This document shows, piece by piece, positions 54,340 to 59,460 of a stretch of DNA of 64,000 nucleotides. The notes under the pieces are model-generated. The model was not told where the DNA came from, ran no database searches, and worked only from the letters and a program-made list of their open reading frames with translations. A program made the translations under genes and the position numbers. Location of the stretch: assembly GCF_032062105.1 (NCBI RefSeq), contig NW_026930969.1, forward strand, positions 1 to 64,000, written 5' to 3'. Each line of letters begins with the position of its first letter. Position 1 is the first letter of the stretch. Source of the stretch: Saccostrea cucullata. Its lineage: Eukaryota.

Positions 54340-56540
54340 TATAAATACGAGTAAAATAAAATCGTAGTTTTATAAAATATATAAATATTTATATTTATAT
54401 ATAACTTCCCCTTGAACATGTTGAAGTTTGCTAAAAATATTATCAATTTCCATTAACAAAATTTTGTGAACAACTGATGCCCTGTTGCTATTTTATTGCC
54501 AAGATGTGTCCCTCAAGTGCAAGTAAAACTACAAGATCAAGAGGTCAAATGCCTTAGTAACCATAAAAGATTTGTCACAAGGAATAAAAATGTGAAATGT
54601 AAAAAGTTCTTGCTCCAGACTTCCAAAAAATATGATATGGCCAAGTTTATCGTTTTCAAAAGATGAACTCCAAGGTCAAGACCATGTGATAAAAATATTG
54701 GTTTAGCAAATAAAGGTTTCGTCATAATGAATACACGATAGCCTTAGCACCAACAGTTTATTGGTTATAGTTCAATCTCACATGAAAGCACTAACTCTAA
54801 CCAATCAAAGTTAAGGTTAATGGTTTTGCAGACAACATATACAACAGGCAGACGGACAGACCAAAAAATTGACTAAATGCCTTCGAATCTTTGATTAAAA
54901 GGGCAAAAAACTGCATGGGAAGATAGTTATGAGAATATGACTTAAAATGGTTTCGTGGTGAGTCATCCAGTACCAATTATGATTCGGTGTTATAAATGTA
55001 TTTTTAGCAAATACTACCGCTGTAGTACTAGTATAGAGAACATGCAGTGACGCAAACAACACTGACCTTTACTATACTCTATAAAGCACAGATTTTTTTG
55101 TTTTCCAAAAAGGATACCACATGTATTATTTTGATATAGTTAAAGAAGAAATTCTGATATTTTCCTTTTTTACAGGGTGTGTCAATGCGAATTATGAAAA
55201 AAAAAAACGAATGTTGCAGACATTTAACACAAAAAATAAAATACCAGAAAAAATCTGTTTCGGTTACTAGATAAGTTATACTCCCCAAGTAATCAAGTTG
55301 CAGTCAAGTGCAGTACTAGTATAAACTATCGTCATAAGATGACGATAATGTAAGTACTGCATGTACTCTTAAATTGATAATTTCTGATCATCAGTTCTCC
55401 GACTTGTCTGTGTATGTATTAAATGCTTTTTATCTGAAGAAGTTGAATTATATGACGACTCCTTGGCCTGTTCGTGGTATCGATGTTAATTCTAATGATT
55501 TGTCATCCAAAACAATAACATTTACATTAATGTTTATTTCATTTTCTGAACATTAAACTTCAAATTTAGTGATATGCATTTAAAAACATTAATAAACCAT
55601 GACTTCAATTAGCCACTTTAAATTATTAACACCGTATATCTTTATTAGAATGACCGTTAAGCTGTTGAATTTTGTGCTTGTTTAGAAGTGGAATCAAATT
55701 ATATTTTACAACATCCTTCAATAAAAAAAGTCATCATTACTGACCGCCTGGAGGCAATTCTCTGTGAAAATTAAGTAGGGGTATAATGCAGTTCGATGGA
55801 TCAGTATTTTTGCAAATAGCTCCAAGGCCATCTTCGCATGCCAAGGGTTTTCGATCACTGTGCTTTATTTTAGCAAAAATTTGGGAAAAAGATGAAAGTT
55901 GTGTTTGTTTTTTTAAAAAATGACTTCACTATATTTTTACAACCGTCTAAAAATTCTTTCAAAGGAATCAATGTTATTTTGTAATATGGTTACTTTCCGT
56001 CATGTTCCTTGTGCGTTTTTTTTTTTTCCAAAAACAATTCATACATTGTACTTTACTGTCAGTTTTCAAACATTTCAAAATTATGTATGAAACCAGCCTT
56101 AACTAACTTAACATGGTTTCTGAATGTATCTAAAGTATATTTCATAGTATATTATACTTCATCAAGGTCATAGTACACTTACCCACACACCTTGGTGGGG
56201 GTCTGCTCCAGAAACCGTTCCTACAGGTGTCGTAAGATTCCCCGTACAGAACAAATCCATCATTACAAGTAAACGATATTGCTCGCCCTTTCATTCGGAA
56301 ACTGGATCTTCCATTCGGAATTTCAATCAAATTACAATCTCCTGGATAGAAATTTACATACACATTTATATGCAAATTGGGTTAAACAGTTCCATGTATT
56401 GGACCGATTAAAGAAAGAAATGAAAGCGAAATAAAGTTTTGGAGAGTGTTTGTATTTTACAAGTCTCTATACTCACCAAGCACTAATAATGGACTAATTC
56501 CTGTAAAAATAATAATTGTAACAATAAATCGCATGTACAT
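48787..56540 (-). CDS. Paralogue B: signal peptide-2xCCP-MAM-Ser/Thr mucin stalk-TM protein, class C scavenger receptor-like (~557 aa)
   Basis: Exons 56477-56540, 56183-56341, 51317-51481, 51054-51215, 50661-50801, 50426-50568, 50200-50290, 48787-49535; 1674 nt, in phase. Same intron phases as paralogue A, with exons 1, 5 and 6 of identical length (64, 141, 143). MAM motifs [47 protein letters not shown]. Confidence 0.9.
49830..49920 (+). mobile_element. Short interspersed non-LTR 3'-end fragment (second copy ~3090-3175)
   Basis: ggggatgctcactcctccaaggcacctgatcccacctct matches ggggaatacttactcctccaatgcacctgatcccatctct at ~3107. Confidence 0.5.
51572..54136 (-). mobile_element. HINE carrying ~13-14 copies of the ~166-bp Cg170-type satellite (intron 2 of paralogue B)
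   Basis: Same termini as 4846-5966 in reverse orientation; period 166-167; units at ~53030-53310 and ~53820-54060 carry scattered deletions. Confidence 0.88.
54256..54334. repeat. (AT)n microsatellite
   Basis: Run of about 35 AT units. Confidence 0.95.
54455..54910 (-). mobile_element. Degenerate CvA/pearl-like HINE
   Basis: gtgaacaactgatgcccc end, aaggtcaag repeats and a cagacggacaga microsatellite remnant. Confidence 0.45.
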
Positions 56541-56841
56541 TTCTTGTTTCTGAAACGTATTAAAATGACATTTGGATCAGTCAGGCGCTAAACTCCAATT
56601 AGGGGTGATTAGGAGATAGACGGGCGACATAAATCGTGGACATAAACTGTTACAATGGAATTCAACAAACTAAGTGGCCTGGATTAGTACAAAACACTCG
56701 GAAAGATTTCTAAAGCGATGATGCTGTTCCCAGGACTAAGTTGAGCTTCCGGTTTCCCATGATGACTCCATCTCTTGGAATGTCCGTTTAACATATACAT
56801 TGTGTAACATTATATTTATAAGAAGTGTGGATTAGAGAATT
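56541..56841. promoter_or_regulatory. Candidate bidirectional promoter (301 bp between two divergent ATGs)
   Basis: ATG of paralogue B at 56540 (-) and ATG of the secreted-protein gene at 56842 (+); ETS-like ACCGGAAGC on the minus strand at ~56745-56753. Confidence 0.5.
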
Positions 56842-59460
56842 ATGAACTATATTAAAGGATGGACGCTTCAACAATGGTTTGCTCTTAAAATTAGGACTTT
56901 ATGACATAAATTAATATCTTGATTCTTTAAGTTGCTTTGAAATTTTTTGGTTGGACCAAACCAATTTTATGATATTCTGATAGCGGACTTGAAGACACAC
57001 TGATGCTACGATTGTTGCTTCTTTTGTAGGGTCTGGGTCTTTTTGCTGTGCTTTGCAACATTAATCCAAAACTCTGGTGACTTTATGAAGATCTTCATTA
57101 AACATTGCTCTCCAATGTCCATAAGCAGTATAAATTACTGGTAGAACTAATTCTGTTTAATATGTTTTAGACTGTAGGTCAAACTGCAGCACTCCTTTAA
57201 ACATCCGGGACAAGTGGTACTTCCGGGATGAACCTGGCTCTGTGTTGAGGGTCCGGAAGAAAAGTCTGGTTTTCAAACAAGCCGGAAAGAAGACGATACG
57301 CTATAAATGTCTAGAGGCTAAAGGCCAAACCTTCATGCTTAGGTATCGTTTGACTTTTTAAAAAAACAACATTTATTTAGTTTTGTCAATTTAAGTGACT
57401 GATTTGTCCTTCAAAATACATAAATATCACTTTTCCAGAACTCGAGTTAATGAAGAAAACGCCCAGGGAATATTGTGTATAGGATTTGTTTCGGTTGATG
57501 TACCCAAAGCTGATTTTAGTGTATGGAGACTGTCACGTAAGATCTGCTTGCCTCTTCACTAAATATTTCCAGCTGCTATTTGAAACCATTCCTTTGATAA
57601 AAATTAATGATATTCCACTAATTTGATTTTATCACTCACTTTGTTGTAGAGGAAGCCGCAGGTCACCCTTTGATGGCCCCTGTTTCGGTACCAGCTATGG
57701 TGACTCCAAGTATCAACAGTATGTGCAATGGGGTCCAGTCACAAATACAGTACTATGTACATAGGGCAAGTACGCATCACTTATTGCAGTCTTCACAATA
57801 TATCTAAAATGTGTAACTTTGTCACAATTCCCAAGATAAAATAGCTGCAGATCTGTAGTTCACTGGTCTGAAAAAATTGGATGGACGGTGCTGTCCATAT
57901 ATTTTTTTAGAGCTATAGTTCTGCAGCTAAGGATAAAAACTGTATCTTTTAGTCAACTAAATACATTGTGCATATAATCATAGATGCACAATTTATCGAA
58001 GACACTAGTTTTATTGTGCTTTATATGTATGAATTTAACACCAGTATCTACTGTATTCATAAACGTAATACTAAGTATACTATGCTCAGAAAAGACGTGT
58101 CGGTTCCCGCCAACTCTCCGACTCATGTGGCAGACGACAATACAGGGAGCATGGCGGCTATCATTTACAAAATACGACATGTACTTCATCACAATGAATA
58201 GAACCACACTCCACTTCAGCTGCGACACAAGAGACAAAGACAACTTTATTTTAAGGTTAGAACTGCATCATTATATGTTGCTTGAAAATTTATATTGTCG
58301 CTGCTTATTTTTTCACTACATGTATATATTATTAATAAATTAGGTAAAAATAATATTCTGGTTCTTTTTACAAAAGAAAAAAAAAGTAGAAAATCTATGC
58401 TCTATCTAAGTTTCTCGCTTTGACTCACCAGGGCCACTAATATACAGAAAGGAATAGACGGGGTTCTCTGTCTTCGTATTCTTCCGCTGTCCGGGGATCC
58501 TTACTACAGATTCAAAATTTCCAGAACGAATTGTAGGTACCTTTTAATAAAACAAGTTTTAATTTGATGCGTATAAGTGTATTCATTCAAAATCGAAAAT
58601 TTTAAATAATTTACATTCAAATAAATCGGGACTGCATGTCAATCTTACTCGAGGGGATTATTTTTTACTCCAGACAACTTTTCCATGATTTTACCGGACA
58701 ATCCTCGTAGAAGTTTTTGAATAAATTCTCTTTCAAAATAATATAACAACAGTTCGCAAATAAAGGAGCGCAATTAGTGCCCACGGGAAATCCTACAGTT
58801 TAATTGTTGGAAAGCTTGATCTCTGAGGACACCCGGGAGTATATAAATGTTGTCAATCAGGAACTCCAGAATCCTTATTATATCAAATTCAAACTGCTTG
58901 TGTGTACAATCAGAGTGGTTTTTATCAAAGGAATTTTGCTGATGACATCGCCGGATTAGAAAATTTCCGAGTTCATTTTTATTAAGAGAAGCAGTTGTCT
59001 ATTATATGAGTCTAGATTTTAACTTATCGTGAGGAATAACGAAAGTGAATCAATATAAAAAGTTCTTGATCTATCTTTGGTTGATTGTAGAAAAAAAAAT
59101 TTAATGTTCACCTGTAAAGTGTGTACGGTCTTGTGCAGGCGAACGTACATTTTCATATTATCGGTATGGTTGAATGGAGTAAGCCAATTGTCTAGTAAAG
59201 CCTAAAGTTACACTACATCGATGGCAATCTTACATATGTTATTTTTAGAAGTACGAATTATTTCTAGGGTAGGCAGTGTCATATCGTATAACGTAGATGA
59301 AGCTTAATATTTTTCTTTTTTTTCTTTTTCTTTTTTAGCTGGAAGGGATGACTCAGTTTTTGACATGATTAAAAGGGTTCCGCATGGTCAACGATTTCGT
59401 CTGTACAAAGATTGTAACTTGATCGAGAGCCCTGCACGACCACAATTCCTATATCCATAA
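56842..59460 (+). CDS. Uncharacterised secreted protein (286 aa) made of two tandem 4-Cys repeats
   Basis: Exons 56842-56876, 57030-57076, 57171-57342, 57439-57536, 57650-57769, 58090-58255, 58432-58532, 59339-59460; 861 nt, GT-AG, no internal stop. Signal peptide WVWVFLLCFATLIQNS; repeats CSTPLNIRDKW...C..FMLR...GILC...VP..CN and CRFPPTLRLMW...C..FILR...GVLC...VP..CN. Confidence 0.82.
58720..59060 (-). mobile_element. Penelope-like retroelement RT fragment (degraded), in the last intron of the secreted-protein gene
   Basis: Minus strand reads LEFLIDNIY...FQQ..VGFPVGTNCAPLFAN, matching the G-I-P-M-G-T-N-C-A-P RT motif, with frameshifts. Confidence 0.7.

What the first reader, a model, noticed from the sequence alone, without database searches (positions are those of the whole stretch)
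56477..59460. Hidden secreted two-repeat protein head-to-head with receptor B (301 bp apart)
Seen: eight short exons, mostly absent from the ORF track, give an uninterrupted 286 aa protein with a signal peptide and two ~130 aa repeats. Each repeat is encoded by three exons in the same phases and keeps C-x2-P-x3-R-x2-W, C-x7-F-x-LR, G-x-LC, F-x3-R and VP-x10-CN. I recognise no family. Inference: a disulfide-bonded beta-rich (calycin/APCDD1-like) fold co-regulated with the receptor through a shared promoter, possibly as ligand, opsonin or co-receptor.
Basis: partly seen in the sequence, partly recalled or inferred. Interest (0 to 1): 0.8.

Follow-up and report, generated by a model that had tools for sequence, protein, structure and literature searches.

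The report
Oyster secreted twin-barrel protein gene
This is a real oyster gene, already annotated but unstudied, for a small secreted protein built from two lipocalin-like barrels; it has stayed head-to-head with a cell-surface receptor gene in oysters, pearl oysters and scallops, which hints, without proving it, that the two work together.

Summary
Eight GT-AG exons on the + strand (56842-59460) splice into a 286 aa frame. That frame is letter for letter RefSeq XP_062568580.1, "uncharacterized protein LOC134230758" of Saccostrea cucullata. So the gene is missing from an ORF track but not from public annotation.

Evidence that it is a working gene:
- It is single copy in this genome.
- It is under strong purifying selection (dN/dS 0.06 against S. 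echinata).
- A Crassostrea gigas-like oyster has spliced 1 kb cDNA contigs with the same junctions.

Relatives were found only in molluscs: bivalves, gastropods, a chiton and a cuttlefish. Orthologues pass Pfam DUF7043/DUF7044, and this protein misses the cut-off by 0.1-1 bit. I found no paper on these families.

The head-to-head pairing with a Sushi-Sushi-MAM-mucin-TM receptor is present in all five pteriomorph genomes examined, with 283-301 bp between start codons in oysters. It was not seen within 10 kb in a chiton, two gastropods or a unionid.

A ligand or co-receptor role remains untested. This is a new member of a known but uncharacterised kind, of moderate interest.

The parts
56842..56876 (+). 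Exon 1, coding part: ATG and the n-region of the signal peptide. The transcribed exon probably starts near 56720.
   Evidence: identical to P0018. The 5'UTRs of orthologous cDNA contigs align colinearly to 56738-56793.
57030..57076 (+). Exon 2: hydrophobic core of the signal peptide and the likely cleavage region.
   Evidence: Kyte-Doolittle maximum is 2.6 over residues 13-24. The AF2 model puts a helix at residues 9-27.
57171..57342 (+). Exon 3: first exon of barrel 1 (C33, W43, C74).
   Evidence: family profile hit, E 7.6e-23.
57439..57536 (+). Exon 4: middle exon of barrel 1 (C98).
57650..57769 (+). Exon 5: last exon of barrel 1 (P128, C143, R156). It is 120 nt and phase 1-1, so skipping it would keep the frame.
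58090..58255 (+). Exon 6: first exon of barrel 2 (C161, W171, N194 sequon, C202).
   Evidence: E 5e-19.
58432..58532 (+). Exon 7: middle exon of barrel 2 (C226, R244).
   Evidence: The junction choice is fixed by the conserved S-R-x-N-S-G.
59339..59460 (+). Exon 8: last exon of barrel 2 (C272), the conserved C-terminal S-P-A-R-P-x-F-L-Y tail, and the TAA stop at 59458-59460.
   Evidence: E 3.9e-11.
56541..56841 (.). 301 bp between the two divergent start codons: shared promoter region plus both 5'UTRs. Sequence blocks here are conserved between Saccostrea and Crassostrea virginica.
   Evidence: Alignment A3, block positions and 5'UTR mapping.
56477..56540 (-). Receptor B exon 1: ATG and signal peptide, with a GTGAGT donor.
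   Evidence: The orthologous exon is found in S. echinata.
56183..56341 (-). Receptor B exon 2: a complete CCP/Sushi domain with 4 Cys.
48787..51467 (-). Remaining recognisable receptor B exons: a second CCP (about 51279-51467), MAM pieces (50399-50844), and the Ser/Thr-rich stalk, TM segment and short tail (48787-49593).
   Evidence: ORF translations. Orthologous genes carry Pfam Sushi and MAM.
59601..59683 (+). Candidate poly(A) signals: ATTAAA at 59601 and AATAAA at 59678. Neither is verified.
   Evidence: Pattern scan only.

Best explanation
The locus is LOC134230758 of Saccostrea cucullata, a single-copy gene under purifying selection for a secreted, basic protein of about 30 kDa (pI about 9.8). 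The protein has a signal peptide followed by two homologous domains of about 125 residues. Each domain is encoded by a duplicated three-exon module, carries four invariant cysteines (probably two disulfides), and is predicted to fold as an 8-stranded lipocalin/calycin-like barrel. The protein belongs to a mollusc-wide two-barrel branch of the uncharacterised metazoan DUF7042/7043/7044 superfamily. It is transcribed divergently from a compact promoter of 300 bp or less, shared with a Sushi-Sushi-MAM-mucin-TM receptor gene. That arrangement is kept in three orders of pteriomorph bivalves.

Proposed mechanism (inferred): the protein is made together with the receptor and acts outside the cell as a soluble binding module. 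It would hold a ligand in a barrel cavity or on its loops or surface. The conserved positive charge favours an anionic partner such as a lipid, a glycan or the receptor's mucin stalk.

My odds for each layer:
- Real gene with this fold: about 0.9.
- Co-regulation with the receptor: about 0.6.
- Direct functional coupling to the receptor: about 0.3.
For: - Gene model equals RefSeq protein P0018.
- Spliced 1.0 kb cDNA contigs from a C. gigas-like oyster break at the same exon borders.
- All six domain exons keep AG/GT in S. echinata, with dN 0.026, dS 0.44 and dN/dS 0.059.
- The only match in the 1.17 Gb genome is this locus.
- Family members occur in bivalves, gastropods, a chiton and a cuttlefish, with 8 invariant Cys.
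- Pfam DUF7043/DUF7044 match in 15 and 14 of 16 members. P0018 scores 26.0 and 26.9 bits against a cut-off of 27, and orthologues reach up to 37 bits.
- DUF7043-like genes elsewhere in this genome share the same exon border.
- There is no second hydrophobic segment. pI is 8.4-10.1 in all 16 members.
- A divergent Sushi+MAM neighbour is present in S. echinata (291 bp), C. virginica (283 bp), Argopecten (555 bp as annotated), Pecten and Pinctada.
- Intergenic blocks are conserved between Saccostrea and Crassostrea. The orthologous 5'UTR maps to within about 180 bp of the receptor's ATG.
Against: - Transcription here is inferred from RefSeq and from orthologues.
- No coordinates were available, so neither the cavity nor the disulfide pairing could be inspected.
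- Conserved bidirectional pairs often share regulation without sharing function.
- The pairing was not seen within 10 kb in a chiton, Lottia, Lymnaea or Potamilus. The protein family is therefore older and wider than the pairing.
- Other DUF7043-like loci in this genome showed no MAM/CCP neighbour in the flanks fetched.
Confidence: 0.55

Rival explanations
1. The protein is an independent carrier. It would be a lipocalin-like transporter or scavenger of a small hydrophobic or anionic molecule (lipid, pigment, sterol, microbial product) whose function has nothing to do with the neighbouring receptor. On this view the head-to-head layout persists only because the two genes share promoter DNA that is hard to split.
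For: - The fold neighbours are classical small-ligand binders.
- The family exists in molluscs where no Sushi-MAM gene lies within 10 kb.
- Other DUF7043-like genes are not next to MAM/CCP exons in the flanks seen.
Against: - The adjacency survives in three bivalve orders even though the spacing and the intergenic sequence have changed beyond alignment.
- No ligand is known, and no cavity could be examined.
Confidence: 0.3
2. This is the reader's hypothesis: the protein is the dedicated soluble ligand, opsonin or co-receptor of the adjacent Sushi-Sushi-MAM receptor, and binds its ectodomain directly.
For: - The divergent pairing is conserved in all five pteriomorph genomes examined.
- The promoter is tight and conserved in oysters.
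- A conserved basic charge on the protein faces a Ser/Thr-rich, probably anionic, receptor stalk.
Against: - There is no direct evidence.
- The only complex job that could be sent, against CCP1 alone, returned no answer and does not count either way.
- The full ectodomain could not be tested.
- The pairing is absent where checked outside Pteriomorphia.
Confidence: 0.25
3. The protein is a structural or matrix component, for example of shell, mantle mucus or extracellular matrix. Basic, disulfide-rich and secreted, it would act by adhesion rather than by ligand capture.
For: - The best structural neighbour for both domains is Tp0751.
- pI is high in all members.
Against: - No low-complexity or repetitive matrix-type sequence is present.
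- No paper in the searched library names any member.
- A shared fold says nothing about function.
Confidence: 0.1
4. It is not a functional gene: either a chance open frame or a decaying duplicate.
For: None beyond the lack of reads from this species.
Against: - dN/dS is 0.059.
- Splice sites are conserved.
- Orthologues occur across Mollusca.
- Spliced cDNA contigs exist in a related oyster.
Confidence: 0.02

Closest known systems
Pfam DUF7043 (PF23070) / DUF7044 (PF23071), with DUF7042 (PF23069): uncharacterised metazoan domains
   Same: - Both repeats align to the first two thirds of these models.
- Orthologues exceed the 27-bit cut-off.
- They share the N-terminal C-x-[FT]-P...W motif and the later F-x-C and L-R positions.
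- The exon border after the first roughly 54 domain positions is the same as in other DUF7043-like genes of this genome.
- The ESM Atlas's nearest clusters all carry these DUFs.
   Different: - This protein itself scores 26.0/26.9 bits, just under the cut-off.
- The last third of each domain (VP-x10-CN, and the SPARP-x-FLY tail) is not covered by the Pfam models.
- The architecture is a short secreted two-domain protein. The clear DUF7043 proteins of this genome are intronless products of 649-702 aa, and the 702 aa one also has a ShK-like motif, a Thr-rich stalk and a hydrophobic C-terminus.
- Pairwise similarity to those proteins is nil.
Lipocalin/calycin-type 8-stranded barrels (Tp0751 pallilysin 5jk2, Bacteroides lipocalin-like proteins, Bla g 4, ApoD, RBP4, avidins)
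   Different: - Sequence identity is 5-16%.
- There is no Pfam lipocalin hit and no PDB sequence match.
- Foldseek E-values are not significant.
- Two barrels sit in one chain.
- The cysteine pattern is its own.
APCDD1 (PF14921; PDB 8e0p): a membrane-anchored WNT inhibitor with two tandem lipid-binding barrels (PMC10193966)
   Different: - APCDD1's barrels are larger (160 C-alpha atoms superpose between ABD1 and ABD2) and have helix-loop inserts.
- It has 12 conserved Cys including an interdomain bond, and a TM anchor.
- Here there are 8 conserved Cys and no TM.
- The APCDDC profile matches only 1 of 16 members, at E 0.038.
- APCDD1 ranks 46th, behind generic lipocalins.

Membership tests
Pfam DUF7043 / DUF7044 | Whole-protein score at or above the curated cut-off (27 bits). 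| tested here: inconclusive
   P0018 scores 26.0 (DUF7043) and 26.9 (DUF7044), at E 1e-5 and 6e-6, with both repeats matched. Orthologues P0001, P0028 and P0034 score 27.4-37.1. 15 and 14 of 16 family members match at E<=1.
Pfam DUF7043 / DUF7044 | Conserved N-terminal Cys-x2-Pro...Trp motif and later Cys positions, alignable with undoubted members. | tested here: met
   Exon 6 aligns end to end with DUF7043/7044-positive exons of the same genome (L009, L010, L021), sharing C, F-P, W, F-x-C and L-[RT].
Pfam DUF7043 / DUF7044 | Shared gene structure: the domain is split after about 54 positions. | tested here: met
   Exon-sized hits in the own genome cover model positions 2-54 or 57-97. Exons 3 and 6 here end at the same point.
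Lipocalin / calycin superfamily | Eight-stranded antiparallel up-and-down barrel. | tested here: met
Lipocalin / calycin superfamily | Lipocalin sequence signatures (Pfam Lipocalin families). | tested here: not met
   No lipocalin family appears among the Pfam hits at E<=1 for any of 16 members.
Lipocalin / calycin superfamily | Ligand-binding cavity inside the barrel. | not testable with these tools
   The structure tools return no coordinates.
APCDD1 (PF14921) | Match to the APCDDC profile. | tested here: not met
   Only P0034 matches, at E 0.038 and 13.8 bits against a cut-off of 27. The other 15 members do not match.
APCDD1 (PF14921) | Two tandem barrels with 12 conserved Cys, an interdomain disulfide and a C-terminal TM anchor. 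| tested here: not met
   The two barrels are present. But there are 8 invariant Cys and no hydrophobic segment after the signal peptide (maximum 19-mer Kyte-Doolittle 1.29). APCDD1's features are taken from PMC10193966.

The most novel reading that the evidence does not exclude
The twin-barrel protein and the adjacent Sushi-Sushi-MAM-mucin receptor form an ancient dedicated ligand (or ligand-presenting adaptor) and receptor pair, kept as one divergently transcribed unit across pteriomorph bivalves. That would give the first function for the DUF7042-7044 superfamily, and an invertebrate counterpart to lipocalin or APCDD1-type barrels that feed ligands to cell-surface receptors.
Probability: 0.2. 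Interest if true: 0.65.

Novelty: new member of a known kind. Interest (0 to 1): 0.4.

Why it matters
DUF7042-7044 proteins are widespread in invertebrates, and no paper in the searched library mentions them. This locus contributes three things:
- a fold assignment for the family (tandem calycin-like barrels);
- a clean mollusc-wide subfamily with eight invariant cysteines and a conserved C-terminal tail;
- a concrete candidate partner, through gene adjacency conserved across three bivalve orders.

Together these turn a family of unknown function into a testable ligand-receptor or carrier hypothesis, in commercially important oysters and scallops. The locus is also a compact example of a conserved bidirectional promoter in a mollusc. 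It is not a surprise in kind. Lineage-restricted secreted barrel proteins and bidirectional gene pairs are both common, and the gene is already in RefSeq.

Tried and rejected
- **Joined model.** Exons were searched by reference. The joined translation was built only inside scripts for local checks. Full-length searches used P0018, a database protein that the exon-profile search led to and that equals the model.
- **Alternative exon 7/8 junction** (58536/59346, 285 aa). Rejected on orthologue conservation.
- **Pairwise comparison with the 649-702 aa DUF7043 proteins of this genome.** No signal.
- **Sequence-based structure and literature searches.**
  - Foldseek against PDB gave nothing at E<=0.001, for the whole model or for domain 2.
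  - A profile search of PDB sequences found nothing.
  - Paper searches for the DUF names, Pfam accessions, LOC ids, protein accessions and SRR ids returned nothing.
- **Complex prediction** of residues 28-286 with the receptor's CCP1 exon gave 'no answer' (score 0.00), which is evidence neither way. The full receptor ectodomain is spliced and has no reference, so it could not be sent.
- **Promoter motifs beyond oysters.** The 10-mers shared with Pinctada are scattered and not colinear, so they are chance matches. Nothing aligns in scallops.
- **Three high-scoring long hits of the exon-profile search** (P0006, P0011, P0017) are low-complexity or unrelated proteins.
- **The Potamilus upstream 'gene'** is a low-complexity repeat that is open on both strands.

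
Full report

Reading 56000-60000 and splicing by script gives eight + strand exons: 56842-56876, 57030-57076, 57171-57342, 57439-57536, 57650-57769, 58090-58255, 58432-58532 and 59339-59460. Every intron is GT-AG.

A second possible junction for the last intron (285 aa) is excluded. All relatives keep S-R-x-N-S-G across that junction.

Intron phases are 1-2-1 for exons 3-5 and again for exons 6-8, with exon sizes of 172/98/120 and 166/101/122 nt. The two halves align with a Smith-Waterman score of 64, against 25.7 +/- 4.2 for 2000 shuffles (z = 9). 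The repeat is therefore a true tandem duplication of a three-exon module.

On the minus strand, the receptor's first exon runs from the ATG at 56540 to a GTGAGT donor at 56477. A complete four-cysteine CCP exon follows at 56341-56183. The two start codons are 301 bp apart.

**2. Handling of the spliced model**

Exons went in by window reference. The joined translation existed only inside scripts for local checks.

A profile of exons 3 and 6 searched against 1.84 billion representatives returned a 284 aa protein, P0001. Its cluster holds P0018, which is RefSeq XP_062568580.1, 'uncharacterized protein LOC134230758 [Saccostrea cucullata]'. P0018 is 286/286 identical to the model. All full-length work used P0018 from then on.

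So the window is from S. cucullata, and the gene is hidden only from a prokaryote-style ORF list. NCBI already annotates it.

**3. Is it a working gene?**

- Each exon, and a 16-sequence family profile, find only this locus in the 1.17 Gb assembly.
- In S. echinata the six domain exons keep their AG/GT borders, and dN/dS is 0.059 (dN 0.026, dS 0.44).
- Three Logan contigs of 1.02-1.05 kb carry an uninterrupted 861 nt CDS for P0027. P0027 is 73% identical to this protein, and 115 of its first 118 residues match C. gigas XP_011419114. Their alignment to the window breaks exactly at exon ends 57342, 57769 and 58255. They are therefore spliced mRNAs using the same junctions.
- Reads from S. cucullata itself could not be obtained.

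**4. The family**

Full-length relatives of 276-317 aa occur in the following:
- oysters (Saccostrea, Crassostrea/Magallana, Ostrea);
- a pearl oyster (Pinctada);
- scallops (Argopecten, Pecten; the Pecten model is 363 aa with a probably spurious first exon);
- gastropods (Lymnaea, Patella, Lottia);
- a chiton (Liolophura);
- a cuttlefish.

A unionid (Potamilus) has only a partial 172 aa model. No member was found outside Mollusca, though the searches are not exhaustive.

Across 16 sequences, 21 columns are invariant. They include eight cysteines (33, 74, 98, 143, 161, 202, 226, 272), both tryptophans (43, 171) and part of the C-terminal S-P-A-R-P-x-F-L-Y tail.

Members from all the mollusc classes sampled begin with a hydrophobic segment; the Pinctada and Pecten models have doubtful N-termini (see section 6). 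No member has a second one. The mature proteins are basic, with pI 8.4-10.1.

**5. Known family and fold**

Single exons gave only a whisper of DUF7043/DUF7044 (E 0.11). Full-length proteins match both models with both repeats. P0018 scores 26.0/26.9 bits against a cut-off of 27, orthologues reach up to 37 bits, and 15 and 14 of 16 members match.

The same genome holds clear DUF7043 proteins. It also holds intron-split DUF7043-like genes whose exon aligns end to end with exon 6 and stops at the same place. ESM Atlas neighbours all carry these DUFs. No paper in the library mentions them.

AlphaFold2 with the family alignment gives two all-beta domains (pLDDT 83.5, pTM 0.51). Domain 2 alone gives pLDDT 86.4 and pTM 0.81.

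- Bacteroides lipocalin-like proteins at about 6-7;
- Bla g 4, ApoD, RBP4 and avidins at about 5-6.

**6. The neighbour**

A Sushi+MAM gene lies upstream on the opposite strand in each of these genomes:
- S. echinata: 291 bp between start codons.
- C. virginica: 283 bp.
- Argopecten irradians: 555 bp as annotated.
- Pecten maximus: two Sushi-MAM genes sit inside an overlong first intron of the annotated model. The nearer one ends about 3.4 kb before the likely true first exon.
- Pinctada imbricata: about 5 kb, but the annotated N-terminus lacks a signal peptide and is doubtful.

These species represent Ostreida, Pterioida and Pectinida.

No such neighbour lies within 10 kb in Liolophura, Lottia, Lymnaea or Potamilus.

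Within oysters, the intergenic region keeps ordered conserved blocks. The 5'UTR of the C. gigas-like cDNA aligns colinearly just upstream of the ATG in all three oyster genomes, at 56738-56793 in the window. That places the 5' end of the transcript near 56720, only about 180 bp from the receptor's ATG. This is the anatomy of a compact bidirectional promoter.

Beyond oysters the promoter sequence no longer aligns, yet the adjacency persists. That argues for selection on the arrangement itself.

**7. How it probably works**

*Shown:* the gene, its splicing in relatives, purifying selection, the family's range and the conserved pairing.

*Predicted:* the two calycin-like barrels.

*Inferred:* secretion, two disulfides per barrel, co-expression with the receptor and a binding function.

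Barrels of this kind bind either small hydrophobic ligands in the cavity or macromolecules through their loops and surface. The conserved positive charge points to an anionic partner. I put direct coupling to the receptor at about 0.25-0.3 and an independent carrier role at about 0.3.

The single complex prediction that could be sent, against the CCP1 exon, returned no answer and is not evidence.

**8. Verdict**

The locus is a new, borderline member of an existing but wholly uncharacterised Pfam family, with a lipocalin-like fold. Its most interesting feature is a divergent pairing with a Sushi-MAM receptor that is conserved across three bivalve orders. Interest is moderate (0.4): a good, testable lead for mollusc biology, but not a new kind of system.

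Noticed in passing
window 39900-46600 (-) and 48787-56540 (-): Two tandem receptor genes share one plan: signal peptide, CCP, CCP, MAM, Ser/Thr-rich stalk, TM. Only the downstream one (receptor B) is head-to-head with the twin-barrel gene. C. virginica and Pecten also show two such genes, or a 542 aa neighbour, in tandem.
   Followed up: partly
window 43167-43991 (-): A 274 aa open frame that is rich in Glu, Lys, Asp and Thr and of low complexity. It lies between recognisable receptor A exons. It could be an exon of another gene or a repeat-derived ORF.
   Followed up: no
window about 42270-42430: A run of N (an assembly gap or masked stretch) shows up as X in an ORF translation.
   Followed up: no
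G000:C10893 (L023:1755-3863:-), C18084 (L024:3270-5219:+), C16036 (L025:3295-5244:+): Intronless ORFs of 702, 649 and 649 aa carry DUF7043; DUF7042 was found in the scanned 649 aa ORF (L024; L025 was not scanned). The 702 aa one also has a signal peptide, a ShK-like cysteine motif, a Thr-rich stretch and a hydrophobic C-terminus. They look like membrane-anchored multi-barrel relatives of the family.
   Followed up: partly
P0029 (M. gigas A0A8W8NJH1, 246 aa) and P0002 (C. gigas XP_011419114 isoform X2, 174 aa): Both public models join exon 4 directly to exon 6. Exon 5 is 120 nt and phase 1-1, so skipping it keeps the frame but removes C143 and the end of barrel 1. P0002 also changes frame later. 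These could be real isoforms or annotation artefacts.
   Followed up: partly
P0004, P0007, P0031-P0033, P0037 (Logan contigs): These are many short predicted proteins; P0004 alone stands for 161 member sequences. The two whose sequences were read (P0004, P0007) run from exon 6 straight into the intron of the C. gigas-like orthologue, so they come from genomic or unspliced contigs, not from alternative products.
   Followed up: no
L036 (Pecten maximus LOC117336309) and L028 (Pinctada FSP39_006415): Both have probable annotation errors at the 5' end. The Pecten model borrows an exon 52 kb upstream and spans two Sushi-MAM genes and a reverse-transcriptase ORF. The Pinctada model starts without a signal peptide.
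   Followed up: partly
window 54255-54446: A TA-rich microsatellite reads as (YI)n in translation. It lies inside the long receptor B intron.
   Followed up: no
L026, L027 downstream of the twin-barrel gene: In S. echinata and C. virginica the next gene downstream, on the minus strand, is a zf-RING_4 protein of about 672 aa. Microsynteny therefore extends beyond the pair. No ORF of 70 aa or more with recognisable content was seen in window 59500-64000.
   Followed up: no
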